In this document: one piece after another, positions 1-30,462 of the stretch
Position numbering within the stretch: the stretch's first letter is position 1
Layout: the number at the start of each line of letters is the position of its first letter
NCBI GenBank assembly: GCA_976226885.1
Contig: OZ320313.1
Span: 73,594,001 to 73,658,000 of the forward strand
Origin: Iphione sp. A-MEVVRFRX5
Taxonomy: Eukaryota
Direction of reading: 5' to 3'
DNA length: 64,000 nt
The notes under the pieces: model-generated
Databases searched by the model: none
What the model saw: only the letters and a program-made list of their open reading frames with translations
Told to the model about the DNA's origin: nothing
Translations under genes and position numbers: made by a program

Positions 1-181
1 AGAAGTCGGGGGCACCTGGTCCCAGCACAGATCGAATCAATGGCCTACTTCAAGCAGGCGTGAAACCTTATAACCGTATAACTCCGCTTCATTTAATATT
101 AACGATTTCAGTAGGAGCAAGAGTTTTCAGAGCTCAAGTGTTGTACCCTGAAACTCAAATTGTTTCGTCTTTCCTCTTCAG

Positions 182-225
182 GAAACTATTGCAGGAAAAC
201 AAAATGATGGGCCAAGATAGAGATG
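182..225 (+). CDS. IRAG2: IRAG/LRMP (MRVI1/Jaw1) family protein, internal exon at the end of the coiled coil; the gene starts upstream of the window
   Basis: ttcctcttcag acceptor and GTAGGT donor; encodes KLLQENKMMGQDRD. Phase 2 to 1 chains with the next exon. The full chain gives about 281 aa with family motifs. The symbol is approximate; this is probably a pro-ortholog of IRAG1 and IRAG2. Confidence 0.7.
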
Positions 226-419
226 GTAGGTGATTGCTGAATATGTAAAGGATTGCGTACAGACTAACTAAAGTAAAAACTATGTATGTACCAGAAGCCA
301 AGATGATTATTTGAAGTTTGATTCTTATTCTTTCGAATTATTATTTATAGAGACTGTCCTCCATATTTTTTAACATAATTCATTAGTTTTCATGTTAGGT
401 CTTTCAATTCCTTCCGCAG

Positions 420-472
420 GTGATGGTCTACAAAAGCGGTCATATTCATTAGCAGGAAGTGGAGGACTTAAG
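420..472 (+). CDS. IRAG2: IRAG/LRMP family exon with the first PKG/PKA-type site
   Basis: ttccttccgcag acceptor and AAG|GTAAAT donor; GDGLQKRSYSLAGSGGLK resembles IRAG1 RSMSL as recalled. Phase 1 to 0. Confidence 0.75.
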
Positions 473-3400
473 GTAAATATTGTTTGGTCCTTCCACTGTG
501 ATTTTATGTTTAATGCATTTCATGATTTCTGTTTCAGGCTATTTAGGCAGGATAAATATATGATAAATCGTTCTACTGAAATTGGTAATAAAAATCATGA
601 CGTCAAAGGTACAATATTGAAGAACCATTTGTGTTTCATTCGAGGTCAAAGCAATTTATGTAAGGATAATTTCATAATCAGGTGTGTCTCTGCGAACTAA
701 TACCAGTTGAATTACAAAATAATGTTTGTATATCTGTGTATGTGGTTAGAGACAGAAAAACGCCCAATTATTACTGTTATGTAAAGGACGCTTTATATGC
801 CGATTGTTATATTCGTATGACGAAAACGAAAGCGTTTATACGTTAGGCGGTATATTCCCTACTATTAGTCTTCACCACACCTAAAAGCTTTCCTGCGCTC
901 CTTCAGTGACAGGCGACCGACCTTCCCTTCTCAATAAAGCTATGGTTGCTAAGTAGGGCAATGACGAGCGATGTCAGAAGGATTTTAGATCGAGCCAATC
1001 TACGCTTGACAGGTTATATGGTGGTGGCGGGCGAAAAGTCACAGGAAAGACCTGCAAAGATTGGGTAGGAGGACTGTGGGCGAACGGGGAAGGCAGGCAG
1101 CAGGATACAGGTCGGGCACGTCAGTGTCGATATAAGGAAAATGCCACAGTTGCCGAATAATTGCATGGATGAACTTGCCCTGCCTGGCGTCGGGACGGAG
1201 GCTGTTGTGCCTCCGGCTGGGTTCTGCCTAATCCACGCAAGCATGCAGAAATTTATCGAGCAACTCATTTTTCACGGCCGAGCATTGCCACCATTCGCCA
1301 GGGAATGTTGTCGTCCTTTGCAGAAGCAGGCTGTATTTCAGTCCCGGTATCTCATATATCTGCCACTCAACCCATCGAGAAAGCTTGCAGTATAAAAGGA
1401 GTCTACATCAGCTAATACTGGTCGCGACTAAAAAAAAATGTCTTTTAAGATTATGGGGAACTCGTACTTTGCAGGTTAACAATGCAAGTAGTGCAGTTTG
1501 GATGACTTCGACTTAAAGAAAATAGTAAGGACATTCGTTGGGGTGGCAGCTTCCTAACCTTAGATTAAGACTGCCTCATATGAGGACAAAACGGTGACGA
1601 AAAAGGGTATACATGTATATGTAACACTTTTAGACAGTAAAAATGAAACCCAGAGAGATGATGTATGATGAATCGACGTGGGGAGTGTTTGGATTGATGG
1701 AGACTGGGGAATGTGTGAACCACCTGCGCAGGAAAACGCTGTTCACTGTGGGGAGTATGTATAGATGTAAGCCTGGCTCAAGGCCTTACTCAAATAATTT
1801 GGATAAATGTGCAGCTGTAGGGCTCTAGGTGCCAGGACTTCCTTGGCTGCTCTTATTCCAAACAGTATACCTAATATGAATTGTTGATTTTGATCAAAAT
1901 TTAGCAGTCCTCTTTTTATTACAACATCTGCACTTGACATTATACGTTGCTACCTTGTCGGAGTGTCGTAGAAGCAATATTGCATGTGATATGAACTCAT
2001 TTATTGAATAATCATCGTTACAAGGTACTTTTACATCGTCCTTACCTTGAAATTTGATAACATGAATGCAGAAGCTTATAGGTCTTCTCATCCACCTGCC
2101 TAGACTGTTACGTCCAGCTTACCCTGGACGACACTAAGATGCTGCCAATTCAGAAAAGCGCAGTGATGCATCGGCCAGTAAAAGAAATGTTCTCTTCTAA
2201 ATATGTAGATGTAATTTAATATTTTTGAACTACGTTTTGTCAGTGGAAATTCAGTAGGCCCCGCCATTAAAGACGTAATAGAGATGTACTTTATATCACG
2301 CGTTGGAGACGAGAACAGTTTTGATGGATGTTTCTTTGCTACTTTTATGCATTATCTAAATTAGCGTAAGCTTCCTTTCTTCACCCTTTCTCACCCTAAA
2401 GTAAACTCATTTTCGTTTTATACATACATGTATATGATAATTGGATCATAGCGTTCGGTCAGAATATTGCGAATGAACGTTTTAAGTCCATCCTCTCGGC
2501 ATAAGCTGAAATACTGCAGTGGTTATTAGTTTACTGTTGCCTGGCACTATTTCTAATTGAATCTATCACCAAGGTAAAGAAATTACCACTCGGATTAGCC
2601 ATTGCTCTTGTTATGTAAAGGCGGGCTTGTTCAATTTTTATGTTGATCCTGTCATTTCAAGATGGCAACATTCTTATTAATTTGGAAATACAGTGCGTGC
2701 AACATACAAAGAATCGATTTGCATGGTTGTACATTGAAAGATAGTTTAGTTGCTTCCTCGCCTCTTTCTCTCTCTTTCACGCAGAACTGTTCCCCTGAAA
2801 TCATATACTAATTGTCAATGATTCCTCCGAAGTAACTTTCCCTCCTCCTGTCAAACCTCCTGTACCTTGGTCGTTGTGTGTAATCCCTCCTTTGTCTAAA
2901 AATCTCCAGGGAGGGATGGATTCGTGGAACGGCATGTCTAACCGCTCCTCCAAACCCGGTGCTTCTATGTCGTCCTCCATGAAGGTATATGCGCCTTCCT
3001 CTGTGACAAGTGTCTTCGGGTCTTCTATGTTCTTTATGCCCGTGTCCTGGCGTTGTGTAACCCCGTGTAACCGTGTGCCTCTGTGTTTCTATGTGTACGT
3101 ACGTACGAGCGCTTTGTAGTTTTCACCCTACAGACATACTGCATGCAGACGTCTGTGCGGAGTTGCTCAGCTGCTGGCAGGCAGATGTATAAGGATGAAG
3201 TTCAACACTTGATAGGAATGCTACATGTTTTCTTGTTGATTTTCTTACACTACAGAGTTTGTCAATTAATTTTATTACACTCTGTTGACCTGTACAGTAC
3301 TCGTGTATAATAGAGAAAATGACATTACTGCAATACATCATGTAGCAAATGTTCGTCTTCATGTTACCTTTTTTATTTCAAGACATTGTCCTGAGATTTA

Positions 3401-6400
3401 TATTGAGGCTGCTTGAAGTTGGTGGCCCAAGTGAGAGTAACATTGTTACATAATGACAAAGTACAAGGCTAGTTTTCATAATCTCACGTAAGACAGTGTT
3501 TATTGAATGATATTTTTGAAATACAGAATGATTTTGACCTATGGAATACTAAAGGTCTTTAAACTGCATTTGGATGAAACCATGTCCTCTAGTTTGGCCC
3601 ATATTCTAAGTGTTGATGTTTCTTTAGTAGAGTAGTATCTTATTGTTCAGCAAAACATTTAAGAACTGGAAGTTATGGTAATATTAGCAATATCGATAGT
3701 TTTAATATTTAACCATCACTGTCCTGTACTTCTAAACCTTATACATGTACATGTATTTTCAGACAGATTTCTCTTTAAATATTGATCATCGAAACGAATC
3801 GTTGACAGTACATGCAGGCTAAACAGTACTAAGAAGGAAATTATCATGTGCACAAACACATTTTGTTGTTTTCTATTTTAGACAATGGTGGTAGCTAGGA
3901 GGTTCTTAAAAAGTATGCGGTTTCTTACTTTTTTACCTTATTCCTCTATATCTTCGTGTTGTGGATACAGTATACGACCATTTATATCGCCCCTATAGTC
4001 TTACTTTTTTTAAGTAATGCAAGGCACGAGTTGTGGAACTTTGGTCCATTGGTGATATTTTAATGGTTTGTTGTCGCAATGGTACCGCTAGTCATGTGCA
4101 CCTTAGGAGGAATAGGGGTACATACATGTTTGAAATCAAGCTTGCACTGCTGCTGCTGCAGGACTAACAGAACCTTGTCCATCTTGCCCTAACTTATGGC
4201 AGGTCAAAGACAAGACGCACGCCAATTGTAAGAAGTAGAATTAGCCCCTGGTCGAGTGACTTGCCAAATGCTAAGGGCACGATGTGTGTATGGCCCCTCG
4301 GGGCTTTATCGCAGTTTGTGTGTATAACCTCGTTATACTTTACCTTATATAAAATTTGCTGAAGAACATTGAAGCGCCAGGTCTCATATGAAGAAAGGAT
4401 GTTTTTAAATGGTTTGCTGTTTGATGAAATTGACAATGAAACCGACTCCCAGTTTCAAATCTAATGAAGACTAAGTAGCGGCGAAGTATATTAGTTTAAA
4501 TTGATGTTAACGTTAGTCAATATGGCACGTGATAGTGAGTTACATAATGCTGCATTGGTGATTTTAAGCCTAGAGGTCTTTGTTTTAAACTAGGAAAACG
4601 TTAATATAGTAACATTCATATCACACTTTCACATTTATAGTCTAAGTTACAAAATGTACATGCGGCGCGTTTTCTCTGGAAATGATTTTAAGTATACTCC
4701 TCTCGAACATATGCCTGTATGTCTGACCCCCACTATCCCCACTGTATTATTAGGCTTGTGGAAGGTATTGAATTTCATTACTTACTATATACATATAGGA
4801 AACAAAGAAACTCAAGAAGAATACCTATAGGCCATAAACGTGACCAATTTCCTTAAGAGGTCGCTTGAGGAACTTGGTCCTTCATGTTTTTCTGGAACTG
4901 TGACAAGAAAATGCAGTTTTTATGTTTGCTGCAAATAATTTCTATCAATATTTTCGGTCTATTTGATTGCTCTTTGTTAATTTATGCACCAAAAGACCTT
5001 TCTTGGCCAAGAGCATAATAAAAGTATGGTCTATGCCTTATATATTATTTTTTATGAATTTGGCAGTATGCATATTTTTTGCCTTTCTTATTTGCATTTT
5101 AGTTTAATTCGTGTTTTTATTCATTTCTCCGAATTAGCACACTGCTAGGTGCATGTCTTCTATATATACAATTAATATGAAAATGAAAGAAATTCTCGTT
5201 TGAATGACAATGAGAGCCTCAAGAATATTCCCATTCCCTTCCCCCCTCTCACTGCCTCCCCCCTATCTTTCACTTTTCTCCTGTCTCTTTCTTTCGAGGC
5301 TATCCCTGTCTCTATCTTCCTGACCTCCTTCACTTGCATCCATTTGTCGCACTGGCCTCCACCCCGCCATCCACCCTTTCGTGTTTTTTTTCACGTACAT
5401 TGTTGACATTAACCTCATTTCGATCACATATGTTACGGTTCTTGCTTACGAAGTACCATATATGCGCACAAACAAGAAGCAGCTGGGCGGAATTTTCGTG
5501 ATCATGGTGACATGTGTGCTGTTATCGTATTCTAGTGTGTAATTTATATTGTATCAGCTTTGAAGGCGCTAACTTAGCCATTGCTTGTTCTCTCTTTCCT
5601 TTTTTTTCACTATTTTTAATGCTGGGTTGATTGTAACAGAGGACCACCATTAGTAAGCCATCTCATGTGCTCGCCGCTGCCTCTTTATGTCAACACGCTT
5701 TTTTCTTCTGGCCAGTTTCAAAAGACACTAGTCATCTAACTTTGGATGTGCTTCTAACTTTACGGCAGTGCTAAATCGTTAGATATATTGGTCACAAATG
5801 TCATGTATTGTTATTTATCTTTCCTTCTGTTTAGTTTCCGGACGTTTTTACACTCTCTTTATGTTAGCCTTAAACCTGTTTCCTAATTGTAGGTTTGCAC
5901 ACTCTATTTTTCAAAGACGTACCTTTTTCACCTTTGAGCATGTTAGGTAACTTTTCAAATGACATCAGCCTTTCTGCGCCTTTTTCAGTATTGTAAAAGC
6001 ACTATAGAATAAAAAAAAATCTCTTGAAAGAGTATGATAAAATGTTTTAAAAAAATCTATCAGTAGGAGACGTCCCCTCACAGAATTTTGAGTTTGATAA
6101 ACAATCTCCCATCCGTAAAAAAAGAAAGATATATGCATTTAAGGTATTTAGAAGTTTCCTCTGGAGGTGGCTTACCTGAACGAGCCAGTGCGCTTGTGAA
6201 AACCCTCTATGTCTAGGGACACACTTGTACCTATTATCCTGGTTAAGTTTAGGAGAGGTTTGCTGTGCCACATGTACCCGAAGCACCTTTGTTTTAACTC
6301 TTTTCGCGCTCTGAACTGCGCCTCTTGCCCCTTTTATCCCGTTCTGCATATCTTGATATCACTATTGAAGTGTGTTTCCTTTAGTGGCAACAAGAAATTA

Positions 6401-7111
6401 AGCAGCGGTTTACCGCTTATATAATCGGCCTTCTAACAGTCATATTCTTCAACTATATATGACAAAAGGATAGATTCACATGTATTTTTACCTGGTTTCA
6501 TTTTCCAACTACTTACGCAAGTTTGTAACAACGAAGGCATGATATTCCTCTGCAAGAAATTTTGCTGTTTAAGCTTATTGTACATTCAAGGTAACAGCTG
6601 TGTACCTGCATGCCACACGTAGTTAGACAGGTAGTTTTTCTGCTTTTGTAGCCACATACCATCACTCAGCAACAGTACATGCATAGGAAAACTGTCGTTT
6701 TTGTCAACGTCAATATGAGAATTAAACAGTGTTTGTTGATTCATTTATTGATACATATGTCCTCTCTCTAAACTGACGAGCCCAAGCTGCTTCTTCTTTT
6801 CTCTTCTTCCTACGTCAACCCAGCCCGTGAATAATTCTTTTAATATAGAAGGCGATTACTCTTACCGTACTTACATAATTAAATCATTTTCGAATTGGAA
6901 GTACACCATACCCATGTACGTAAAGAGGAAACGATGTCGAAGGGCATATAGTATTTTTTATTTATTTCGGACAGAATCACACATTTGATAACGATCATTT
7001 ACCACTGGCGCCCTTCCATTCATGTGATGGAGCCCACCCCCGTGGGCCCCCTTTAGCCTGTTATGTTGCTTAACAGGCAGTGTTTTTTTGCTGTTGCTCC
7101 ATCGCCATCAG

Positions 7112-7207
7112 CCGGCAGGAAAACGTCGCGCGAGCGTTGCAGCGTTTCCGAGAAAGCTGAGCACGCTGGGGGTGGCGTCTAGCACTTCCGGCCTCGACCA
7201 ACCAATG
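7112..7207 (+). CDS. IRAG2: IRAG/LRMP family exon with the RRASV site
   Basis: ctccatcgccatcag acceptor and ATG|GTGAGT donor; PAGKRRASVAAFPRKLSTLGVASSTSGLDQPM matches IRAG RRVSVAVxPK as recalled. 96 nt, phase 0-0. Confidence 0.85.
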
Positions 7208-8437
7208 GTGAGTGAGTCGTCACCTCCTTCCAGTAAACAAGCCTCAGCGTTAAGACGTATTACCATAGAGGAAGGTCGAATGGCTTTTACCCCAGGAAGC
7301 TTTGCCTGTGGAGTATATTTTATCTGATACGTTTTGCTTTTATTTTTGAAACCAGTAGGCCTATGGTTTATTCTGTAAGAGCCATATGCATTAATACCAT
7401 CGCCTCTTATGCTGATTTCCAAGCAGTCCACTAGAGTGAATGAGTACCTTACAGGAAAGCTGATTTATTAGTGCCTTTGCATCATTTAGCCGTACTATGC
7501 TCCCAAACACCTGGATATGTATGTGCAAGCACCACCATTTCTTTGTAGCTACCCTGGCTGCAACTCAACTGAACTTTTACATTGTATTGGCAAATGAATG
7601 TCTTTAAGCCTATAATCCATGTGCACGCATGTCCAAATGCAGATTTGAAGGATCAATACAGCAGCAGGGTTGCCCTGTATGGACTGGTACTATGTGTCAT
7701 GGTGTCTGTCAATTATCTCTCAAATCTGTTTGCAGCCTTGTCGAAAAATTTAGAGAAGCCAGACTTGTATAATGACCAATGGAATTACGTACGGGCACAT
7801 GGATCTTAGGCCAAAGTCCTTAAGTAGCGGAAGCTAGAGGGGAGAAACGCTAATAGATGTTATGTTTAATCTATTCAACGCACCATATAGGATAAAGACC
7901 ACTAGTTTATAAGAAATTAGAGGTAAGACTTACTGGTCGGTATTGAGTACGACGCGCATCGTCTTTTCTCTTTTGGTGCATATTTGGCTCTTAAGTTATC
8001 ATTAGCTAGGTCATTTTCATTGTGTGAATTAGTTGATTACTATCTCTTTAACATGGATGGGGCATACAAGCTTCAGCTGGCATGCATATTTAATCGATAT
8101 GGTTGATGTGGGATGTTTTATTTTATTTTGTTTTGAAGTTGTAATTTGTAACAGCTTGAGGCACCTTTATAACATTAATTAATACTATTAATGGTGCATA
8201 TATGTACATGTATATATCAGTCACGATATACAGCAAAACGAAGTCCGTCTTTCTATATAGTTTAATGAAAAAAAAATGTTTAGGTACGATATAAAATGAA
8301 TCCATAAAAAAAACTGAAAAAGACTCATATTTTGTGATTCCAATAAAGATATTTTTAGCTTTGTCATATCGAATGTTTCTCGAACACAGGCTGTTCATTT
8401 TTATCAAATTTAATTTTGTCTTGTTTTTAATCAACAG

Positions 8438-8473
8438 TTTTCCAAGGTCTTACTCCATCAGGCCTTTGATGAG
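8438..8473 (+). CDS. Candidate 36-nt cassette exon of the IRAG/LRMP gene
   Basis: ttttgtcttgtttttaatcaacag acceptor and GAG|GTATAC donor; FSKVLLHQAFDE; phase 0-0 inside a phase-0 intron. No homology support. Confidence 0.4.
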
Positions 8474-9109
8474 GTATACATTAAGTATTGCTCCTCTCCA
8501 GATAGGGATTCGTAAAACGACTCGAATTAATAATATGAATTACTATGATTCCTACTGCACCTATATTGATTAAACATGTCTCGTTAGTATTAGAATCGCC
8601 TTATCTTTCTTGGACATTGTTTTGGATTAAGTGTAGGTACAAAATACAGCGATTTGTTGATGACAGCGATTTCTATACATTTGTTGCATCTGTCTGCGGC
8701 ATGACTATTCGTCCCATCCTTTGTAGACTTAGCATTCTATTATTTATAGGTGAATTTCCTTTCCCTGTATGTTTTATTCACGTCTACCTGAAAACTTGTC
8801 CTGCTGAACCCCTCTCAGCAAATTATTTATTAAACCAACTCCAAAATGTGAAGTAATATTTTAAACCACTCTTCATAGATATAAGAGAAATGTACCCTGT
8901 AATCAATGTAAAGCTTCCAGTGCCTGTTGATAAAATTAATGTCTCGACACTCCACTAAGGAGAATACAGATTTGTATTCACGATTTGTTCATAATTTGTA
9001 GAAACAAGTAATGCTTGAGCAACATATCCGGGATGTAAAATTACCTCGAACATAAACATGAACACCCCTGAGTGTTGATGGTGCCTGTATTGACTCTTGT
9101 GGCCTGCAG

Positions 9110-9252
9110 GACCCCAAAACTAGATTCCAGACGTTAATCGCCGACACGGCGGCCAAGGCGAGCGTACTCGACCAGTTCCGGAGGTCCATATCACTCGACC
9201 AACAGCCAAGCCGCCCAGTCGACGAGCAAGACAAATCTACCATAAAACACAG
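9110..9252 (+). CDS. IRAG2: IRAG/LRMP family exon
   Basis: ctcttgtggcctgcag acceptor and CAG|GTAAAC donor; DPKTRFQTLIADTAAKASVLDQFRRSISLDQQPSRPVDEQDKSTIKH; phase 0 to 2. Confidence 0.85.
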
Positions 9253-10367
9253 GTAAACAGGCCATACCACAGCTTCTCGTTATGGGCGGGTGCACATGTG
9301 TTTAAATATAATTTAACTGCAATGCGTTGCGAACAGGATATGCCAGGTTTATCTAAAGGCATTCGATTTATTTGTATGTTTTATGGGATAGCAGTTAATG
9401 CTTGGGTTAATACGGGTTAAGAAGTAGCAGTCTCACCTTTGCCAACGGTGAGGTCCGACATACAGGATAAAGTAGGGGACGAAATATCTGATTCCACAAG
9501 TGTAAGTCATAATTTTTAAAGGAAGGCTTATTTGTGTGTGTGTGTTTNNNNNNNNNNNNNNNNNNNNNNNNNNNNNNNNNNNNNNNNNNNNNNNNNNNNN
9601 NNNNNNNNNNNNNNNNNNNNNNNNNNNNNNNNNNNNNNNNNNNNNNNNNNNNNNNNNNNNNNNNNNNNNNNNNNNNNNNTCTTTAGTCTATTGGCAATAG
9701 TTCCTGGAGTGTATACAGCAGAACGCCACATTACGAACAGCCCTGGGACTGAAGCAGCAAGTGTCCATAAGGTGGTCATGTCCGTATTATGATCTACATT
9801 GTTATAAAGAAAATGCAGGTTCTATATTCACTAGGTAGTCGTGTCCACTTCACGATCTTCCTGCAAGGTGGCCATCCACTGTTTATACTAATGCATATGT
9901 CATTGTATGAAGTAGACTGTTGGTTGGGGAGCTGAGACAGGTACAGAGTGTGCAAAAGCAGGTTATACCTGCAAGCCTGTGTGAATGGCTTTGTGAAGGG
10001 CATGCATACATGTATTTTCACAGTTAGAGCGACACTATAAAAGGTGTGCGTGGACTTAAGAAGAGATCCGGAAATCTGGCGAGTGTCGTTGACACCAATA
10101 TACATGTTTTTAAATTCAGAAAGATTTAATGTAAATTATCTTCTTTCAGTATCAATAGTATTCTATTTTGCTCGTATTTATAAAGAAAGAAAAATATTCT
10201 GCCTGAGGAAGTCTACGGGAGTAGACGAAACGTCGCAGCAGCTCATGTACACATCAGTCAAAAAAAGTCCTAAAGTCTTTGCAATTGTTGTTGGTTGGGT
10301 GTTCTCTGTCATTAGATTTATAAAGAAATAGTTTGTTAGAGATGTTAATAAAACTGTTTTGTTGCAG

Positions 10368-10502
10368 CCTAACGAATGGTGCTAAGCTGAACTCTTCACA
10401 AGATCAGCACGAGACTGCAGAGAAGTCGCTGAATAGTGAGAATTTACAGAAAAACCTAGACTCCAATAGCAACATAAACGAAGAGGCAGCATTTCAGAGA
10501 GG
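10368..10502 (+). CDS. IRAG2: IRAG/LRMP family exon
   Basis: ctgttttgttgcag acceptor and GG|GTAAGC donor; ...NSNINEEAAFQR; 135 nt, phase 2-2. Confidence 0.85.
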
Positions 10503-10774
10503 GTAAGCTTCTAAAACATGACCCTAACACTTGTATATTGGTGGCATGACATGGCCATCACAGAAAGCACGATCTTTTCATTATCATGATCTGTGACGAC
10601 GGATTTTTGCCTCTAGTGGAGGTCAGTTATTCAAAATTTGGGGGGATTCGTCACCCAACTGCCTGAAGTTTTGAAGATTTCTGATGTACTATCGGAAGCA
10701 TTGGAATTTAAAGGAGATTCAATATCTGATAACATTGACTAAAACTCTGGTTATTTCAACCAGTTATAATTATA

Positions 10775-10954
10775 CAGTTGAAACCCTATTTGCAACCACA
10801 TCATTTTGTGGACCAAGCTTAAGTGGTCGCATTGGTGAATTTGGTCATAAATAGGGTATCAAGTGTGTGGAATCAGGATTTTTGTTGCAACCTCGGGTGA
10901 TCGCAAATAGAGAATGGTCACAAAACGATGTGGTCGCAAATAGGGTTTCGACTG
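10775..10954. mobile_element. Tc1/mariner (pogo/Tigger-like) MITE, 180 bp, in an IRAG intron
   Basis: TA|CAGTTGAAACCCTATTTGCAACCACATCATTTTGTG ... CACAAAACGATGTGGTCGCAAATAGGGTTTCGACTG|TA; about 36-bp TIR with 3 mismatches; TA flanks on both sides. Confidence 0.85.
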
Positions 10955-11343
10955 TACATATACATATACGCCAAGTGCATGCACATGGACATATTTCCTG
11001 GGTTACGTTACTGTGCATCACTCACCAACAGGTGGCTTCAACACATAGTGGGTTGTCACTAGAACAAAGATCAAACATTGGAATTTCTGCCAGTTGTTTT
11101 GAAAGGTATAGCAGTGAAAATATATATGTACAGGGATTCCTGACACAGAATCCGCTATGTGCACACTCTACTAGCTCTCTAAGACGGAAAGCAGACACGT
11201 CCTTTACTCTCATTCTACTTGATATGTAAACGTGCACGTCCGTATTACGAATTAAAGTATTTTCTGTGTGCTATGATTTATTTATGCCTCAAGGATAGCG
11301 GAAGCTTTGCATTGATGGCACATTCATGTCTAATCCGCCACAG

Positions 11344-11472
11344 GTATGAAGAGGGACTGCGAGCCAATCTAGGCGCTGAGTTCGCCGAGCTGCGACAACA
11401 ACAGCGGGCCCTGCATGACAATATCGAGAGTCTGACCGACCAGAATGAAGTCCCAGATGAGGAAGAGGAAAG
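11344..11472 (+). CDS. IRAG2: IRAG/LRMP family exon (short coiled coil and acidic stretch)
   Basis: ccgccacag acceptor and AG|GTAGGC donor; GYEEGLRANLGAEFAELRQQQRALHDNIESL...EEEE. Spliced EEAAFQRGYEEGL resembles IRAG1 EEEAYSKGFQEGL as recalled. Confidence 0.9.
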
Positions 11473-12076
11473 GTAGGCCCCTACACTACATACCTTGCTG
11501 TACACACGTGGCCAGTTGCATGGATACTTTCTTCACGTGAATAACTCATCGTGAAGGAAATGTGATTATTCATCCTAAAATATTAGTTGTGTGGAATGTA
11601 GAACTAAATTGTTTTGCTGTACCAAGACCTGCATAAACATATATGCACATATATGTTCTTCACTACTAGATTATTTCTATGCTTTTTTGCTCAGTTCAAA
11701 AAGTTCCTTATTCATAAGGAACAAACTGTCCCTGCAACTGGCCAACACTGTGTATGCATCAGTAAGATAAGCTGCGTCATGTGATGGAGAAATTTCCGTG
11801 TTCTGGACACGTAACGTCCTCTTTGTTGGCGCGCCGTTTATTTTATGGTAACTGTAGAATACATGTCCCTTATGTATATGACTAAAAATCGTCAAGAACC
11901 AACCGTGTGTCGTCCATTTGGGCATGTTATTTGCCTTGTACAGATAAGGAGAGTTGTAACTGCTATCACTGTCTGCAACAGATAACCAGAGGGGATAAAC
12001 TTAACGGATGTACCGTTTATGCACGTGATCTGTATCCTTTGACCTGCGCCAAATGCCATCTTCTGTCTGTCCACAG

Positions 12077-12323
12077 TTTGAGCAGCAGGTGGGTAGAGGT
12101 GGCGTGGCGCCTGGTGCCAGGCTGGCAGCGCGCAACTGCCCCCAAGCTCCGCTTCACGCTGGCCGGTATCGTCTTCCTCCTGGCCCTGCTCAGTCTGGTA
12201 CTGACTCTCGTCCCGGTCGGTTCGGCGACGGAGCGTTGCCCGCGGGTGTACGGCTGGACTTCGGCCGGCGATCTCCTGCAGTCGCATCTCTCACTGCAGC
12301 ACAGCGGAAGGCCGCCCACTTAG
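12077..12323 (+). CDS. IRAG2: IRAG/LRMP family last exon: transmembrane helix and KASH-like luminal tail
   Basis: ttctgtctgtccacag acceptor; TLAGIVFLLALLSLVLTLVPV TM followed by ...GWTSAGDLLQSHLSLQHSGRPPT-stop (TAG at 12321-12323). Confidence 0.9.
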
Positions 12324-13806
12324 AGAGCCTTCTACACCCACCACGCCCGTTCAGTGCCCGCCCACGAACCCTAGACGGTGGCCTTAACGCTGATCAGTGA
12401 TACAGCACAGGAGAGAAATATTCCTCTGCGTGTAATCGGGTAAAGAGACCCGCCGCCCTCCGTTTACTCCTCAAAACATCTAGGAACACTGCCTTATCTA
12501 TTGTCTCTGCATGGCTCAACCATGGAGATAGGTCTTTTAGTTCTTCTTTGCATATCATAGTCGTGCATATAAACAATGTGACTTAAACGGTAGTGACAGG
12601 TTTGAATGTCCATCGGAAATGCCACCTGAAATGACTTGAGGTGAGAGGAAGGACGCTGATTTATAAATCTAGTCCCTATCAGGGCTGCCTTGTTCTGCAA
12701 GCGCCGCACGTCCATACGATCACGTACTTAATTCTGATCATTTCTGGTTCTGTAGCCAGTCCTTAAGAAGTTTATTGGCGAGCAGAATCTGTCGGCTCGG
12801 ACTCGTCCAGGAAGTGCATGTGGCTCGTCGGTAGGGATCGTCATTGTAGTCATGGTCGGAGCCCGGGAGAGTTGGCGACCGTGTCGGTGATGTTTATTCT
12901 GTATATATACAGACTGTGATCAGTGCCGCCTTACTTTTAGCGGACTCCTACAAGCAGTTGGCGACCAGGTCTAAACTGACCGGCGACCAACGGCAAGGTG
13001 GGTTACGTATACATTGTATGTCGGGAATCTAGTTTTGGGGAAATCTTTCCTGTATTGATTTTATACCGTTTCTTTTCTTTTCGTTGTTTCGGGAAAAAAT
13101 ATTGATGAAACAGTTGTCTCTGTACAAAGTTTGCTGTAATATCTTGTAAATAACCTTCTTTTGGTGTTCTGTATTCCTCGTTCATGTATATAAAACCAAC
13201 TAATTTCGTCAATAGTGAGGGAGATTAAGTCGGTCTGCGAATGGTATGTATCCAGTAAAAGGGAGGACATCCCGAAGAAAACTCTTGCATCAAAGAATAC
13301 ACTAGGGTTAATTATCTTTCACATGGTGTATGCAATATTTATCATAATTGGAGCCCCAAGTCAAATTGGAATATTTTAAAAGGCTCTGATATTATTAGTT
13401 GTATTCAGTCCACCATACACCACTGCCATCTACTGACGGACACCTAGATAAGGCAGGCCAGCAACCAAAGCGTCTTCCCTCAGTCAGCTGAATACCGATT
13501 CGTGTCCAAAATGGTCTACAATGAAACAGCCTGCAGTTCACAGTTTTGAACAATGTCATTCCTACCGGAGAGGATATGATTTTAAGTTTAAAGGTACAAA
13601 AAAAGCATATTCTATACAAATTCGGCATATGGTTTGATCGCAAACCATGAGCTATTTGAAATGACCCAATGACAATTCATTGGTACTAGTAGATTTTAGT
13701 CTTTACCAATTCCGTCAAAAATTAGTTGGTGAGTCTATAAGAAGCATACTTTTACGCAAAGGAATTATTTTCTTCGTTGAGTACATAATATAACAATACA
13801 CCAGTG

Positions 13807-13812: not shown

Positions 13813-14694
13813 GATCATAAAGAACAGAAACGTGGTCACCTTTGAGTGTCCTGCGCTTTCGCCTTGTCAGTAGTAGTCTACGCTCGTCCAGTCTTCGTCC
13901 TGAGATCTGTATCCATGTGTCAAAATACTGCCGGTTGACGTCCAGGATGGAGATGCTTGACAGTTGCTCGCGCTACTACATGTATACGTATGTGACGAAC
14001 ATGCATTGTTCTGGGATGATCAAAAGTCTTGTAATAAAACTGTGCATACTTAAAAAAAGGATTTTGTTTGCTTTTGTGGTGAGGCCACATATGCTTGGTT
14101 TATGTGCCATTACATACTTTATACATTCATTGGATTCAGGCCTTCATCCTTTTTGTCCCCTGCCTCATACAGGGTTCCCACAGCACAGGGAAAACAGGGA
14201 AAATGGCCCAAAAAAATTCCCTGTCCAGGAAAACACAGGGAATTTGGAAATTTGGGGCAAACACAGGGAAAACACAGGGAAAAAAATTTTGAAAATTCAT
14301 TTTTAAAAATCAAAAAATTTTTAAACATCATTAGTTAGAAAATCATCCATATGTAATCAAATAGTAAGAAATACTTCATGGCAGTCATAAACATTAACTG
14401 CTTATATTTTCAATGGAGGTCATATCTGCACTGGAAGTGGAGATCAGCAGATAAGATGACCTCCATTAGTGGAGCCAGGAAAACCTGAAAAAGGGGGAGG
14501 AGCCTATTCTTTGAAGTTAGAGCCGGTTTGGAGGCTGGGCCTCCAAGTACGACTAAGAAAAAGTGATGTCATGTTGCACAATCCCCCTTTTCCCCCTATA
14601 GCTGGAGGGAACTGTGAGACTCAGTGTTATATCATGTTGCACAAGCCCCCCTCCTGCAGGGGAGATGGCCAGAGCAGGAGGGAACTGGTGGGGC

Positions 14695-14900
14695 TCCCAG
14701 GCCGCCCGCCGAGGCTCCCGGCCGCCCGCCATGGCTCCCTGGCTGCCCCCCGTGCTTCCCCGGCCACCCGCCGTGGCTCCCTGGCTGCATGTCGTCGGTC
14801 CCCGGCCGCCCGCCGTCGGTCCCCGGCCGCCCGCCATCGGTCCCCGGCCGGCCCCCCTCACTCCTCCTCCTCCTCCTCCTCCCCTCCTCCTCCCCCTCCT
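14695..14900. repeat. GC-rich 20-21-bp minisatellite followed by (CCT)n
   Basis: Repeats of CCCCGGCCGCCCGCC(G/A)TCGGT-like units, then ctcctcctcc. Confidence 0.85.
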
Positions 14901-15580
14901 GTCCTTCTATGTGCAATAGTTTCCCAGTTATCACAGTTTTTCTTTGCCCACCTCTTGAATGTCCTTCTATGTGAAATAGTTTCCCAGTTATGACAGTTTT
15001 TCTCTATACCCACCTCTTGACTATGTCACCTGATGCCACCTCAATCATCTGCGTCATTTGGTCGTTAGTATTTTGGTTCAGGTCCTGTCATTCTATGTGC
15101 AATAGTTTCCCAGTTATGACAGTTTTTCTCTCTACCCACCTTTTGACTAGGTCACCTGTTGCAGCCTCTTTCACCTGCGTCATTTGGTCGGTAGCATTTT
15201 GGTTCAAGTCCTAACAGTTTTTCTCTTTACTCACCTTTTGACTAGGTCACCTGTTGCTGCCTCTATCACCTGCATCATTTGGTCGATAGCATTTTGGTTC
15301 AAGTCGTGTCCTTCTATGTACAATAGTTTCCCAGTTATGACAGTTTTTCACTCTACCCACCTTTTGACTAGGTCACCTGTTGCCACCTCTATTACTTGCG
15401 TAATCAGATCGGTAGCATTTTGGTTCAAGTCATGTCCTTCTATGTGCAATAGTTTCCCAGTTATGACAGTTTTTCTCTTTACCCACCTCTTGACTAGGTC
15501 ACCTGTTACCACCTCTTTTACTTGTGTCATTTGGTCAGTAGCATTTTGGTTCAACTCCTGTCCTTCTATGTGCAATAGTT
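14901..15580. repeat. 126-bp tandem repeat array, about 5.5 units
   Basis: Unit start GTCCTTCTATGTGCAATAG at 14961, 15087, 15308, 15434 and 15560 (126-bp period; one unit lacks about 31 bp); partial unit at 14901. Confidence 0.9.
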
Positions 15581-15613
15581 GCTAAGTTATTATGGTTTTT
15601 CCCTTTCCCTTCC

Positions 15614-16048
15614 CACTCTATGTTCATATTCTCCAATATGTTCATACTCACACTTGTGTTCTCATTCATATTCCTGCTCTCTTCATGTTCTTACTGATAC
15701 TCATGTTCTCAATCTTATTCTTAGTTATATTCTCACTCACATTCATGCTCTCATTCATACTTTTGCTCTCTTCATGAACATGAGTAAGAGCATGAGTGAG
15801 AACATGAGTGAGAGTATGAATGAAACCATAAGTATCAGTGAGAACATGAAGAGAGCACAGGTGTTAATGAGAACATGAATATGAGTGAGAACATAACAGA
15901 GTATGTATGTGCGAGTATGAGTGTGAGTGAGAACATAACTAAGAATAAGATTGAGAACATGAGTATCAGTAAGAACATGAAGAGAGCAGGAATATGAATG
16001 AGAACACAAGTGTGAGTAAGAACATATTGGAGAATATGAACATAGAGT
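15614..16048. repeat. Long inverted repeat (about 128-bp arms) built from TCTCAT/ATGAGA-like simple repeats
   Basis: 15614-15741 is the reverse complement of about 15921-16048 with 2 mismatches. Confidence 0.9.
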
Positions 16049-20840: not shown

Positions 20841-23800
20841 TTCGTTCCCAGGCCTCCTGGCATCCTCCTCTGCAAGGATGTCCTCCACCGCCCAATAACA
20901 GTGCCCTGGCTTACTCAGTGCCAGGCTGGCATATGCTAGCACTCCCTGCCTCTCCCTAAGAGAGCACAGCCCCGAGTCATTCAGCAGAGGCGTCTGTGTC
21001 CATAATCAGCTGTCCCTCTGGAATGAGATACCCTAATATGGATGTGGTGGTTAGGCATGTGCACAAATCTTCGAGGGCTCTCTGCTGGTCAGGTCCCCAT
21101 TGGAATGCCATCTTCTTATTGAGTAGCCAATGCAGGGCTTCCACCCTCCTGGCAAAGTTCTGTATAAAGGACCGGTACAATGAGGATAATCCTAAGAATC
21201 TATGGAAATCCTTGAGATTTGAGGGCAGTGGCCATTCCAGCACAGCCCACACCTTTTCCAGCTCTGGACACACAGAGTTTACACTCACCACATGGCCCAG
21301 GTAGGTAACCTCCCTCTGCAATAGCTTACACCTCTCTGGCCTGATTCAAAGCCTCGAAGTCAGCACAGGACTCCCATGCAGTCTCACATTTGCTGTACCA
21401 AGCTGCCCATGACAATGACATCATCCAAGTACATGAAGCAGACCTCTCCAATCATGCCAGTGTAAACCACTTCCATTAAGCATTCAAATGTTAAGGGAGC
21501 ATTACACAAGCTGAAAGGTATCATTCGGAATTGGAATAACCCTCCTGGGGTGCATACCACTGTATTCTTCGTTCTCTTCCTTGACTCCCACCTGCCAGTA
21601 CCCAGAGACCATATTGATGACAGAAAAGAACTTTGCCCCTGCCAGAGCATCAAGAGTGTTGTCCACCTGAGGAATTGGATAGGCATCCTTACTTATTAGC
21701 CCATTTAGTTGCCTGAAGTAGATGCAAAATCGCTGCTTTCGAATCCTCTTCTTTATGAATATGACTGGTGAGGCCCAGGGACTCCACAACGGTTCCAGCA
21801 CCCCTTGCTTAACCATCTTCTGCACCTCCACCTCAACAATCTTCCTCTTATGTGGGGGGCAGACAGTGGACTTCCTGTCAGGTGGGTTCAGCGTCACCTG
21901 TTCAAATTTTGTGCTGCACGAGTTTAGTCTAGCCAACCGTCCCTCTGCAGCTGTGGAATGCACTTCCATTGGCGTGCAGGACCTCTCGTAGAGCTGTCCG
22001 ATCCTCATTGCCATAACCATCTGGAACCATGCTAATCAATTCTTCCACCACCCGTTCCTCTTCCTGGATGATCCCATCCCCACCATCTTCCTCTCCTACT
22101 TTAGTTAGGGTAGCCACCTCCGCCGCCCCCACCATGGCCCCTCTGTGCAGCCATTGTCCCTCTGCCATAGGGTTCAAGCACAGGAGCGACATCCCCCCAC
22201 TTCCCCCACCAAGGTAGGTGTAGTCCTGTCCTCATCTCAAACTTCTCCTCTGGTTCCACAATCCACCTCTCTGCTACCAATGTCACTACTGTGACAGGAA
22301 TGAAACTCCCCCATTGGCCTTTGACCTGGACATCCCTGGCTACGCTGACAATCGCTGCTGGTTACCTTGGAGGCTGAAGCTGTACTATTCCATCCACGGT
22401 GTCCACCAGTGCAGAGTGCATCCATCCCCAGGATGACCCCGAAATCCGCCTCCACGACTAGTACATGGAGAGACCACCTAACTGACTGGAATTTGACTTC
22501 AAACTCTGCTTCCCCCCCCAGCAAGGCAAAGGGTGTCCATCGGCCCTCACGATCTTCTGACCCGGCTTCTTCTTCACTGTCAACTTCCATTTCTCTGCCA
22601 TGTGGGCAGCCAAGATAGTAGATGAGGCCCATGTGTCCACCAGCCAGGTGATCTCCATTCCTTCAACCATTCCTTTCAGCATCAAAGTTCCCATGTGCAG
22701 GTCCACCACTCCTCTTAGTGTCAATGAGCCTCCCTCCACCGATTCAGTCATCCCTGGGTCTTCCTCTGCTAATGAACTTCTGGGGATGAATGTCTCTGCT
22801 GTCTATCTGTCTCCCCTTACTGGGAGGATAGCAAGGCATTTTCTGCTGGACAGTCCCTCTTGAACTGCCCTTATTTACCACAATGGAAGCATCCAGTTTT
22901 CTCTCCTTTTGGCCCTCTTCCTTTCTTCTACTTTCCCTCGAGCTGCTTGATCTTCTCTGCCAACTGAAGCAACAACTCCTCTGTCAAGTTGGGTTTCACC
23001 TCTGGGGCTCCCTCCTTCATGCCCTCTGTCACCACCATATGGCAGTTTGCCCTGGCACCTTCACCTCCTTGGCTGCTGGCCTCCCTCCCATCCCTGTTAT
23101 TGTAATAAGCCTATGTGAAAGCAGTCTCTGACATGACAGCTCAGAACCCATCAACATGCTTCTGCATGATCCACTTCCTCACCCACTCCTCTTGCACTGC
23201 CTGGACAAAGCTTTCCTGGCAGAGGGCATCGGCCCAACACCCCTTGACTCCCGGGTAAGCGTCAATTTTGTTCACTAGCTGAGGCAGGTCTTACCCAGAC
23301 TTTTGATGGTACATCTTCAACTGTTCCTTAAACAAATCAACACGGCCTGGAGACTGAAATCTGTCAGCCTCATGGTGGTTCTTGGGGGCCCCCTCAGATA
23401 TACACCTAACTGCACTGCCTTCTCCTTTTCACTCCAGCTATTGGCCATCGATACCAAGTGGAAATGATGGAGGTAGTCCTCCCAATCCTTGGACCGTCTG
23501 ACGGGCACCTATCTCTGTGGTGGCAATCCCTTCTGTGGGTGCCACAGTGTTCTCCAGCATACCATCCTCCTCCACATCTGAATCACTACGATCAACAGTT
23601 GCAACCACCTATGTGGACACCTTCACAGGATCCCCTGTATTCTGAGGCTCCTCTATGGAGGGGGGCTGCCTGGCCCCAGGCTCCTGTGGCTGTCCTGGGG
23701 AATCAGCCTCCCACACCCCCTGGCCCCCATCCCAAGGCCAGAAGGGGGTCCTTCAAGGACAGTCCTGCCCTCGCTCCCACTGCCCTTTGGGGATTCCCCC

Positions 23801-28411: not shown

Positions 28412-28852
28412 TTAGAAACATGTTAAGCTCATACTGCGGTTGACCTTCTTGCCAATGAGGCGCGAACTACGACCCGCTCCCACCTGCGATGGCAACACGT
28501 GTGTGACAATATTCCCCCCGCCCCCGCCGGCGCCTCCTGTTGCCGCCGTCGCCCCGTCCGCTGTCGTCTGGTTGTGTTCCGTGGCCGCCTTGAGCTGACG
28601 CGTCAGCAGCTCGTTCTTGAAGCGCTCCTCGTTCAGCTCCTGCCGCAGCTGCTGCCGCGTCTTGCGGGCAAACGGACACAGCGTCGGGTGTTGGCACAGC
28701 GAGGCGGCCGAGGGGCGAGCGCGTGGGTCAGGTTGCACCATCGACAGGAGCAGGTGATTCAGCTCGGTGGAGCAGCTCTCCAGTGGCGGCAGCTCCCCAC
28801 GCCGGATTGCCTGCCAGGAATCGCCGTTCTTGGGTAGCTCTCCTCCACCCCC
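28412..28852 (-). CDS. WEE1: Wee1 kinase, coding exon 7 (C-lobe end and coiled-coil tail)
   Basis: tttcccacag acceptor; GGGELPKNGDSWQAIRRG...MVQPDPRARPSA...KKVNRSMSLTCF-stop. Confidence 0.95.
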   Translation of the reverse strand, partial: GGGGELPKNGDSWQAIRRGELPPLESCSTELNHLLLSMVQPDPRARPSAASLCQHPTLCPFARKTRQQLRQELNEERFKNELLTRQLKAATEHNQTTADGATAATGGAGGGGGNIVTHVLPSQVGAGRSSRLIGKKVNRSMSLTCF

Positions 28853-29401
28853 CTGTGGGAAAAGACACAAATTATGCCTTACATTAGATGCCTAAGGATT
28901 ACGATTACACCAGCTTTAGGGTGATATAAAGCCATCAGTGAGGTCATGCTACTAATAACCAAATATATTTTGGACCTATTTCAAGCCAGTGAAATGACAG
29001 GCGTTTCATATTCATTTAGACTGGACGAGGACAAATAATCACGAAAATCTCATTTTTGATAGCTGTACTAAAATCGTTTTTACGTAAACACTTTTTCTAT
29101 AAGGGAAGAGAAAAGATTAGTATACCAAAATATATCTTTCCATTTCAACAGATGAGACGAAACAACACGAGATCAGAAAAAGTCGTGATTAACATTCACA
29201 TGTATACGGGACAATCTGGACAGACAAACAAAAGCTGGACTAGCCTTATCATAAACAGGCATTGCTCTGTCTTATAGTTCGTATTTTAATACTAAAAACA
29301 GAGCAAAGGACTGTGTGTGGAACCGAAGATAAATTCTCGCTGTCGGATAACCACCAGAATACACACAAACACACAAAAAGATAAATGTTAAGGAAACATA
29401 C

Positions 29402-29643
29402 CGCTTCCCAAATGGTCAGCGCCAGGGAGAAAATATCAGCCTTTGGGAGGTGCTCAAAGCTGTCTCTGAGCAGTTCGGCCGGCAGGTAGCGACAGTCGCC
29501 CTCCTCCACCGAAGTGGCCGTCAAGGATGTGACGTGGCCCAGGTCGCCTATCTTGTAGGTAACGTCCTCCTCGGTGTCCTCCAGGTCCTCCTCCAGGCCG
29601 GACTCGGACGACTGCTTGGGGTCCGAGTGAAGGAAGATGTTAC
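29402..29643 (-). CDS. WEE1: Wee1 kinase, coding exon 6
   Basis: NIFL...[10 protein letters not shown]...[11 protein letters not shown]...[10 protein letters not shown]; GT-AG sites, phase 1 to 0. Confidence 0.95.
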
Positions 29644-30340: not shown

Positions 30341-30462
30341 CGTTACAGTACTCATTCTGGATGTACATGTGGTCATTCTCGGCCCACGCTGAGAAGTAAC
30401 GCACCACGTGGGGATGCTTGCCCAGAACGGCGTGCGCGTAAACTTCATTCATGGCGGTCCGT
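30341..30462 (-). CDS. WEE1: Wee1 kinase, coding exon 4
   Basis: [38 protein letters not shown], containing the Wee1 EVYAHAVLG signature. Confidence 0.95.

What the first reader, a model, noticed from the sequence alone, without database searches (positions are those of the whole stretch)
182..12323. IRAG/LRMP gene that seems to combine IRAG1 regulatory motifs with an LRMP-type KASH tail
Seen: seven phase-consistent exons give ...KLLQEN..KRSYSL..KRRASVAAFPRK..EEAAFQRGYEEGL..TM..WTSAGDLLQSHLSLQHSGRPPT*. Knowledge (recalled): vertebrate IRAG1/MRVI1 has RSMSL, RRVSVAVVPK and EEEAYSKGFQEGL but no KASH; IRAG2/LRMP/Jaw1 ends WTSLEHILWPFTRLRHNGPPPV, a SUN-binding KASH. Inference: a single pro-ortholog could link cGMP/PKG-IP3R calcium control and nuclear-envelope LINC anchoring in one protein, before the vertebrate paralogs divided these roles. 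The supplied ORF track mostly misses this gene.
Basis: partly seen in the sequence, partly recalled or inferred. Interest (0 to 1): 0.7.

Follow-up and report, generated by a model that had tools for sequence, protein, structure and literature searches.

The report
Invertebrate IRAG/LRMP gene end, KASH6-like tail
The region holds the last seven exons of an invertebrate member of the IRAG/LRMP family of calcium-channel-associated membrane proteins, and its short tail resembles the nuclear-envelope anchor of vertebrate LRMP; this is an ordinary but previously undiscussed relative, not a new kind of protein.

Summary
Seven exons with canonical AG/GT sites and consistent phases (182-225, 420-472, 7112-7207, 9110-9252, 10368-10502, 11344-11472, 12077-12323) splice into 281 codons ending in a membrane anchor and a 34-residue luminal tail ending RPPT-stop.

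The N gap (9548-9679) lies in the intron between exons D and E. Its flanks are non-coding. A relative has no extra exon at that place.

The same exons occur in the same order in contigs from at least four other species. In two of them, the exons just upstream pass the Pfam MRVI1 (IRAG/LRMP) threshold. Those core exons lie off the 5' end of this window, so the window's own pieces give no MRVI1 hit.

A profile of the tail exon matches the solved IRAG2/LRMP KASH6 peptide right up to the C-terminus (E = 3e-5). The canonical Pfam KASH model is not reached, and the end is RPPT, not PPPX.

The "IRAG1 motifs" are not specific to IRAG1. Published work shows that IRAG2 has homologous RSAS/RRVT sites, binds IP3 receptors and is phosphorylated in response to cGMP. 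The protein therefore looks like LRMP/IRAG2, not like a new combination.

SUN binding, PKG control and the pro-ortholog position were not tested. Verdict: new member of a known kind, modest interest.

The parts
182..225 (+). Exon A (..KLLQENKMMGQDRD, plus 1 base). It starts with one base that completes a codon, so the gene continues upstream of the window.
   Evidence: Acceptor and donor. Its phase fits the AG| end of the MRVI1 core exon in L002 and L005.
420..472 (+). Exon B, with the basophilic-kinase site KRSYS at 434-448.
   Evidence: Homologous LNKRSYSVVGPG in L002/L003/L004. Pattern R-S-x-S as in RSMS664 of IRAG1 and RSAS363 of IRAG2 (PMC9223716).
2910..2984 (+). Candidate cassette exon X (25 Ser-rich codons, phase 0/0). 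Unverified and not counted in the seven exons.
   Evidence: AG..GT and an open frame. Only a weak alignment across the X-C junction to L002 (E = 0.8). No Pfam hit.
7112..7207 (+). Exon C, with the RRxS site KRRAS at 7121-7135, followed by VAAFPRK.
   Evidence: RRRASVAVVSK in L001, RRRASVAVITK in L007, RRRSSAVVLPRR in L002. The exon ends ..M|gt, as in L001.
9110..9252 (+). Exon D (starts DPKTRF), with a third basic site RRSIS at 9179-9193.
   Evidence: Equivalents start with DPKSRL in L001 and contain EDPKSRL..FRRMSL in L007. DTKTRF in L002.
9548..9679 (.). Assembly gap (N) inside the intron between exons D and E. Left unfilled.
10368..10502 (+). Exon E. It ends ..LDSNSNINEEAAFQRG, with the final Gly codon split by the intron.
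   Evidence: LDSNRNIDQELIFQKG in L002/L003/L004 and LDNNSNVNAQDLYKRG in L008.
11344..11472 (+). Exon F (YEEGLRANL.., a heptad-like helical stretch, then an acidic run).
   Evidence: FEEGVRAQ.. in L005 at E = 1.6e-7. YEEGLRAH.. in L008.
12077..12323 (+). Exon G: a conserved segment before the membrane (..WRLVPGWQR..KLRF), the membrane anchor, the luminal tail and the stop codon TAG.
12153..12218 (+). Transmembrane segment (22 residues, FTLAGIVFLLALLSLVLTLVPV).
   Evidence: The best 19-residue Kyte-Doolittle window averages 2.7. AlphaFold helix over residues 3-44 of the exon, with pLDDT up to 92.
12219..12320 (+). Luminal tail of 34 residues. GSA directly follows the membrane segment. The last 22 residues (12255-12320, WTS..HSGRPPT) are the KASH6-like part.
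   Evidence: The family profile hits the IRAG2 KASH6 chains 8b46_D and 7z8y_D at E = 3e-5, aligned to the last residue. 9 of 22 residues are identical to human KASH6, and none of 100000 shuffles reaches the score. All ten relatives stop at the same place.

Best explanation
The region is the 3' part (last seven, possibly eight, exons; about 281-306 codons) of an IRAG/LRMP (MRVI1-family) gene of a non-vertebrate animal.

Shown:
- The exon model and its collinear conservation in other species.
- A C-terminal membrane anchor.
- A 34-residue luminal tail that is homologous, end to end, to the SUN-binding KASH6 peptide of IRAG2/LRMP and stops right after RPPT.
- Two conserved basophilic-kinase sites (KRSYS, then KRRAS 16 residues later) in the order and pattern published for both IRAG1 and IRAG2.
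- Purifying selection on the tail in two pairs of relatives.

Inferred:
- Its coiled coil, encoded upstream of the window, binds IP3 receptors.
- Its cytosolic linker is phosphorylated by PKG or PKA-type kinases.
- Its tail can insert its free C-terminus into the pocket of a SUN trimer, as KASH6 does.
- The conserved (G/A)-S-A motif right after the membrane segment may be a signal-peptidase site, like the one reported for Jaw1.

I put identity as an IRAG/LRMP-family gene at about 0.9 and SUN binding at about 0.5.
For: - Exon model.
- Collinear exons in L001, L002-L004, L005, L007 and L008.
- MRVI1 Pfam hits above the 27-bit cut-off on the exons just upstream of the KRSYS-type exon in relatives: 45.7 bits in L002, 48.8 and 27.1 bits in L005.
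- The tails of P0002 and P0006 match the last 80-90 positions of the MRVI1 profile weakly (E = 0.007-0.01).
- Profile A1 against the PDB: only IRAG2 KASH6 chains are significant (E = 3e-5).
- End-anchored comparison and membrane segment.
- pN of 0.2-0.37 against pS of 0.7-0.85 in the luminal part.
- The stop position is conserved in all ten relatives.
- A Wee1-like kinase gene lies tail to tail downstream both here and in L002/L003.
- Literature on the IRAG1/IRAG2 sites, IP3R binding, Jaw1 cleavage and KASH6 residues.
Against: - No window exon hits MRVI1 at E <= 1. Even the 344-residue open frame of relative L007 does not, so family membership of the window's gene rests on collinearity, not on a direct profile hit.
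- The Pfam KASH model scores 13.3 bits against a cut-off of 23, and the match covers only the membrane part.
- The end is RPPT, not PPPX. Relatives end QPPS, NPPS, DTPI or GPAL, so the first proline positions are not constrained.
- The KASH6 contact residues L537, E538 and H539 are A, G and D here.
- The luminal part is modelled with low confidence (pLDDT about 50).
- There is no transcript evidence for this species.
Confidence: 0.6

Rival explanations
1. Same gene, but the tail is only a diverged luminal segment used for ER insertion or processing. It does not bind SUN proteins, and the protein acts purely as an ER-resident partner of IP3 receptors.
For: - RPPT instead of PPPX, with very variable last four residues among relatives (DTPI, GPAL, QPPS).
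- The Pfam KASH model is below threshold.
- No nesprin or KASH5 peptide in the PDB is matched even at E <= 10.
- The KASH6 residues L537, E538 and H539 are not kept.
- The luminal domain of Jaw1 is reported to matter for ER targeting and to be cleaved off.
Against: - The stop codon sits at exactly the same place in all ten relatives.
- The W, L541 and H549 equivalents and the PP pair at positions -2/-1 are kept.
- The tail is under purifying selection.
- The solved KASH6 peptide is the only significant PDB match.
Confidence: 0.35
2. One reading: a pro-ortholog that unites IRAG1-specific PKG/IP3R regulation with an LRMP-specific KASH anchor, two roles that the vertebrate paralogs later divided between them.
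For: - Both kinds of motif are present in one protein.
- The sequence is far from vertebrate KASH6 (41% identity in the tail), and CpG observed/expected is 0.52, which fits a non-vertebrate.
- Several non-vertebrate-like lineages carry the same architecture.
Against: - The sites are shared by IRAG1 and IRAG2, and IRAG2 itself binds IP3R, is phosphorylated after cGMP and binds SUN. The roles are therefore not cleanly divided in vertebrates.
- The PKG I-beta docking region is not in the window.
- No tree could be built, and the IRAG1 tail could not be examined.
Confidence: 0.25
3. Artefact: a pseudogene, or two loci joined wrongly at the assembly gap.
For: A gap lies between exons D and E. No transcript data are available. 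A Ty3/gypsy-like remnant and satellite DNA lie nearby.
Against: - All seven exons are open, with canonical splice sites and matching phases across the gap.
- Exons from both sides of the gap occur together and in the same order in L001, L002 and L007.
Confidence: 0.03

Closest known systems
IRAG2 / LRMP / Jaw1 (vertebrates), including its KASH6 tail solved with SUN1 (PDB 8b46, 7z8y)
   Same: - Tail-anchored type II layout.
- Paired RSxS and RRxS/T sites after the coiled coil.
- A luminal tail of similar length (34 residues here, 39 reported).
- The same 22-residue spacing from the Trp to the C-terminus, with W534, L541, H549, G551 and the final PP kept.
   Different: - Only 9 of 22 tail residues are identical.
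- RPPT instead of PPPV.
- L537, E538 and H539 are replaced.
- The site spacing is 16 residues, against 12.
- The N-terminal half is unknown (outside the window).
- SUN, IP3R and microtubule binding are untested.
IRAG1 / MRVI1 (vertebrates)
   Same: - Same Pfam family in the relatives' core exons.
- RSxS then RRxS, as in RSMS664/RRVS677.
- A C-terminal membrane anchor.
- From memory only: human IRAG1 and WEE1 both lie in 11p15.4, which would echo the Wee1 neighbour seen here.
   Different: - The PKG I-beta docking site (bovine residues 152-184) cannot be assessed here.
- Whether IRAG1 has or lacks a KASH6-like tail was not tested with these tools.
Zebrafish Futile cycle (Fue/Lrmp)
   Same: An LRMP-type protein with a KASH end. 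It shows that family members can carry extra functions in one gene (PMC3787381).
   Different: Fue has a KASH5-like N-terminal extension that binds dynein. The N-terminus of the present gene lies outside the window and was not recovered from relatives.
Canonical KASH domains (nesprin-1 to -4, KASH5; Pfam PF10541)
   Same: A membrane segment followed by a short luminal peptide whose free C-terminus ends in prolines plus one residue.
   Different: - Below the Pfam threshold (13.3 against 23 bits).
- No PDB nesprin or KASH5 peptide is matched.
- His instead of the usual Tyr at -6, as in KASH6.
- The only Cys is at -27, not -23.
- The first Pro of PPPX is Arg.

Membership tests
IRAG/LRMP family (Pfam MRVI1, PF05781) | Match to the MRVI1 profile at or above the 27-bit gathering score | tested here: inconclusive
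   Window exons C-G and X give no hit at E <= 1. Exons A and B are too short to scan. The conserved core (profile positions 251-313) is encoded upstream of the window. In collinear relatives the core exons score 45.7, 48.8 and 27.1 bits.
IRAG/LRMP family (Pfam MRVI1, PF05781) | Same gene as relatives that carry the MRVI1 core (collinear exons, shared intron positions) | tested here: met
   The B, C, D, E, F and G equivalents follow in order after the core exon in L002. The C|D intron position is shared with L001, and E- and F-equivalents lie on separate open frames in L002 and L008 as well. The phase of exon A fits the core exon's donor.
IRAG/LRMP family (Pfam MRVI1, PF05781) | C-terminal membrane anchor with a short luminal end (type II, tail-anchored) | tested here: met
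   A 22-residue hydrophobic segment 34 residues from the stop. AlphaFold models it as a helix.
IRAG/LRMP family (Pfam MRVI1, PF05781) | Paired PKG-type sites RSxS and RRxS/T about 12-13 residues apart | tested here: met
   KRSYS and KRRAS lie 16 residues apart without exon X, compared with the published motifs. Phosphorylation itself was not tested.
IRAG/LRMP family (Pfam MRVI1, PF05781) | Coiled coil that binds IP3 receptors | not testable with these tools
   The homologous exons lie upstream of window position 1. A tblastn search with the relatives' core exons finds nothing in the window.
KASH6-type tail (IRAG2/LRMP) | Sequence homology to the solved KASH6 peptide, aligned to the very C-terminus | tested here: met
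   Profile A1 against the PDB: 8b46_D at E = 3e-5 and 7z8y_D at E = 3.8e-5, both ending at the last residue. For the window alone: 9 of 22 identical, BLOSUM62 score 48, reached by none of 100000 shuffles.
KASH6-type tail (IRAG2/LRMP) | Contact residues W534, L537, L541 and H549 named in the SUN1-KASH6 structure paper | tested here: inconclusive
   The W, L541 and H549 equivalents are kept. L537 is A, E538 is G and H539 is D.
Canonical KASH domain (Pfam PF10541) | Profile match at or above 23 bits | tested here: not met
   13.3 bits, E = 0.11, and only over the membrane part of the profile (positions 13-37 of 58).
Canonical KASH domain (Pfam PF10541) | Free C-terminus ending in PPPX | tested here: not met
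   The end is RPPT-stop. Only the last two prolines are present. Relatives end PPPT, VPPV, QPPS, NPPS, DTPI, DTPF or GPAL.
Canonical KASH domain (Pfam PF10541) | SUN-dependent nuclear-envelope localisation and SUN-domain binding | not testable with these tools
   This needs cell biology or a model of the complex. Only single-chain prediction is offered.

The most novel reading that the evidence does not exclude
The KASH6-type tail is ancestral to the whole IRAG/LRMP family and is a working SUN binder in several invertebrate lineages. If so, a regulator of IP3-receptor calcium release was already tethered to the LINC complex at the outer nuclear membrane before vertebrates arose. LRMP would then be neither a vertebrate novelty nor an atypical latecomer among KASH proteins, and IRAG1 would be the derived paralog. 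The unseen N-terminus might also carry a KASH5-like dynein-binding part, as in zebrafish Fue.
Probability: 0.3. Interest if true: 0.55.

Novelty: new member of a known kind. Interest (0 to 1): 0.35.

Why it matters
If the tail binds SUN, it dates the LRMP/KASH6 branch of LINC-complex proteins to before the vertebrate genome duplications. It would also offer a single-copy system in which calcium-release control and nuclear-envelope anchoring can be separated genetically. In the held literature I found no paper that discusses an invertebrate IRAG/LRMP. As it stands, this is a correct gene identification with a modest evolutionary inference, not a new mechanism.

Tried and rejected
- Pfam on single exons: no MRVI1 hit, and the KASH model is below threshold.
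- phmmer of exon G against the PDB: nothing. Only the family profile worked.
- Word search with exon G: nothing in the 45-142 aa range.
- Word search with profile A1: only five short exon-sized ORFs, none named.
- Word search with the 344-residue open frame of L007: only its own ORF P0004.
- The one big search gave nine hits. Seven are exon-sized relatives. P0005 and P0007 are long proteins with many short stretches, and I set them aside as chance or low-complexity matches without inspecting them.
- Cluster look-up gave no names or organisms. Literature searches for the assembly accessions found nothing. The species of the window and of the relatives remain unknown.
- The apparent read-through of P0006 and P0009 past the tail was rejected. 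It comes from the gene caller reading TGA as a sense codon.
- A vertebrate or human origin was rejected: CpG observed/expected is 0.52, and the Wee1 and KASH6 matches to the human proteins are modest (44.5 bits over 64 residues; 9 of 22 identical).
- The AlphaFold model of exon G has low confidence in the luminal part and was not used for a fold search.
- The Kozono 2018 paper on Jaw1 is not held.
Full report
**What is in the sequence.** Reading the + strand of 1-13000 and splicing in a script confirms seven exons.

| Exon | Coordinates |
|---|---|
| A | 182-225 |
| B | 420-472 |
| C | 7112-7207 |
| D | 9110-9252 |
| E | 10368-10502 |
| F | 11344-11472 |
| G | 12077-12323 (includes the TAG stop) |

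Each exon has an AG acceptor behind a pyrimidine tract and a GT donor, and the phases carry over at every junction. The joined frame is 281 codons without a stop. It contains KLLQEN, KRSYSL, KRRASVAAFPRK and EEAAFQRG|YEEGL (the bar marks the intron). It ends with a 22-residue hydrophobic segment and a 34-residue end, ..WTSAGDLLQSHLSLQHSGRPPT-stop.

My first coordinates for exon C were 3 bases off; they are corrected here. Exon A starts at an acceptor with one base that completes a codon, so the gene continues upstream of the window. A further open 75-nt piece with AG..GT in phase 0/0 (2910-2984) could be a cassette exon, but it has no solid support.

**The assembly gap.** The gap at 9548-9679 lies in the intron between exons D and E, 296 nt after the donor and 688 nt before the acceptor, and directly after a (TG)n run.
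- Both flanks have stops in all three frames and show no similarity to any relative.
- The phases of exons D and E fit each other.
- Exons from both sides of the gap occur together in relatives.
- In L002 the D-equivalent (DTKTRF..) is followed directly by the E-equivalent.

So nothing conserved seems to be missing. A lineage-specific exon or a wrong gap size cannot be excluded.

**Relatives.** Single exons give no Pfam MRVI1 hit. The word search with exon G found nothing in its length range. Because the word search cannot see full-length proteins with an 81-residue query, I used the one big search.

It returned seven short exon-sized ORFs with the same layout, which I then aligned. The layout is a W-P-G/A-W/F-E/Q-K motif, a K/R-L/V-R-F/Y motif, the membrane segment, (G/A)SA, and a tail ending in prolines. 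A profile search added two more.

The contigs that carry these ORFs hold collinear equivalents of the window's exons.

| Contig(s) | Equivalents found |
|---|---|
| L002, L003, L004 (apparently one species) | KRSYS, RRRSS, DTKTRF, LDSNRNID..FQKG, FEEGVRAQ.., then the tail |
| L005 | F- and G-equivalents |
| L001 | RRRASVAVVSK ending ..M before GT, then DPKSRL.., then the tail |
| L007 (a 344-residue open frame) | C- and D-equivalents and a tail ending RHHRPPPT |
| L008 | E-, F- and G-equivalents |

**Family.**
- In L002 the exon upstream of the KRSYS exon scores 45.7 bits against Pfam MRVI1 (cut-off 27; profile positions 285-313).
- In L005 the same exon scores 48.8 bits, and the exon before it scores 27.1 bits.
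- These core exons end with two bases of a codon, which fits the one-base start of exon A.
- They are not in the window.
- The tails of P0002 and P0006 match the very end of the MRVI1 profile weakly (E = 0.007-0.01).
- The long C-terminal open frame of L007 does not hit MRVI1 at all. This shows that the region covered by this window is too diverged for that profile.

Membership of the window's gene is therefore inferred from collinearity, not from a direct hit.

**The tail.**
- A profile of six tail exons searched against all PDB chains gives only two significant matches. Both are the IRAG2 (JAW1/LRMP) KASH6 peptide co-crystallised with SUN1 (8b46_D at E = 3e-5, 7z8y_D at E = 3.8e-5), aligned to the last residue. 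No nesprin or KASH5 peptide appears even at E <= 10.
- I compared the window's last 22 residues with the KASH6 letters printed in that output. This is a 28-residue PDB peptide, not a contig. Nine of 22 residues are identical, the BLOSUM62 score is 48, and none of 100000 shuffles reaches it.
- The distance from the Trp to the C-terminus is the same 22 residues.
- Of the residues the structure paper names (PMC10827754), the W534, L541 and H549 equivalents are kept. L537, E538 and H539 are not.
- The end is RPPT rather than PPPX. Relatives end PPPT, VPPV, QPPS, NPPS, DTPI, DTPF or GPAL, always followed at once by a stop.
- Two apparent read-throughs were TGA stops that the gene caller had read as sense codons.
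- Between two pairs of relatives, synonymous sites in the luminal part are saturated (pS 0.7-0.85), while pN is 0.2-0.37. The tail is therefore constrained.
- The canonical Pfam KASH model is not reached (13.3 against 23 bits).
- AlphaFold models the segment before the membrane and the membrane segment as one helix. It gives a low-confidence helix over the Trp-containing part of the tail.

**The "IRAG1 motifs".** The published human sites are RSMS664 and RRVS677 in IRAG1, and the "very homologous" RSAS363 and RRVT375 in IRAG2. IRAG2 is also phosphorylated after cGMP stimulation and binds all three IP3-receptor types through its coiled coil (PMC9223716 and PMC10298018). The window's KRSYS and KRRAS, 16 residues apart, fit this family-wide pair.

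They do not mark the protein as IRAG1-like. Vertebrate IRAG2 already unites IP3R binding, cGMP-dependent phosphorylation and a KASH end. What is specific to IRAG1, the docking site for the PKG I-beta leucine zipper (bovine residues 152-184), would lie upstream of the window.

**Likely mechanism.**
- Shown: gene structure, membrane anchor, homology of the tail to KASH6, and conservation of the sites and of the stop position.
- Inferred: a tail-anchored protein of the ER and outer nuclear membrane. Its upstream coiled coil would bind IP3 receptors. Its linker would be a substrate of PKG or PKA-type kinases. Its tail may dock its free C-terminus in a SUN trimer.
- The (G/A)-S-A motif right after the membrane segment is conserved in most relatives. 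It could be a signal-peptidase site like the one reported for Jaw1 between Ala509 and Ala510. Cleavage there would release the protein from SUN, which gives a way to switch between nuclear-envelope and ER pools.

**Origin.** CpG observed/expected is 0.52. The tail and the neighbouring Wee1 exon match the human proteins only moderately (9 of 22 identical; 44.5 bits over 64 residues). The closest relatives are unnamed ORFs on metagenome, run-assembly and unannotated genome contigs. I take this for a non-vertebrate animal. It is not human, and no contig here was taken for human. The species could not be named.

**Surroundings.**
- A Wee1-like kinase gene lies tail to tail downstream, with exons between about 28412 and 37699 on the minus strand. 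The same neighbour lies downstream of the homologous gene in L002/L003, so this microsynteny is conserved.
- From memory only: human IRAG1 and WEE1 share band 11p15.4.

**Verdict.** The tail really is of the LRMP type. The claimed unusual combination is the normal make-up of this family. The finding is a new, uncharacterised invertebrate member of a known kind. Its interest lies in dating the KASH6 tail to before the vertebrates, which still needs a tree and a SUN-binding test.

Noticed in passing
window 28412-37699, minus strand: A Wee1-like kinase gene lies tail to tail with the IRAG-like gene. Its exons are at about 37046-37657, 30927-31112, 30339-30452, 29864-30022 and 28412-28870. The best PDB matches are human WEE1 and WEE2. 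The same neighbour lies downstream of the homologous gene in L002/L003, so the microsynteny is conserved.
   Followed up: partly
window 20977-22632 (minus strand) and 54821-58804 (minus strand): At 20977-22632 there are ORFs that look like remnants of a Ty3/gypsy-type retroelement; the only profile support is a weak RT_RNaseH_2 hit on one ORF. The ORFs I scanned at 54821-58804 gave no Pfam hit, so their retroelement origin is only a guess.
   Followed up: partly
window 14692-16026: A block of tandem repeats lies about 2.4 kb downstream of the stop codon: a 21-nt GC-rich array, then about 126-nt units in several copies, then 42/131-nt units. It produces the long repetitive ORFs at 14469-15585.
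   Followed up: no
window 10773-10956: A 38-nt inverted repeat (92% complementary, 108 nt apart) in the intron between exons E and F. It looks like a miniature transposable element.
   Followed up: no
window 46334-46473: A second assembly gap, preceded by a 52-nt tandem array at 46154-46333. It was left as it is.
   Followed up: no
L009:326-850 and L010:263-691: In the protein collection these two relatives are listed with products that run through TGA codons, so the gene caller used a code in which TGA is a sense codon. With the standard code both proteins end exactly at ..VPPV and ..QPPS.
   Followed up: yes
window 12219-12227 and the aligned position in P0001, P0003, P0004, P0011: A conserved (G/A)-S-A motif lies immediately after the membrane segment. 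It could be a signal-peptidase site like the one reported for mouse Jaw1.
   Followed up: partly
window 13807 and 14033: The first AATAAA signals after the stop codon, which would imply a 3' UTR of about 1.5 kb or more.
   Followed up: no
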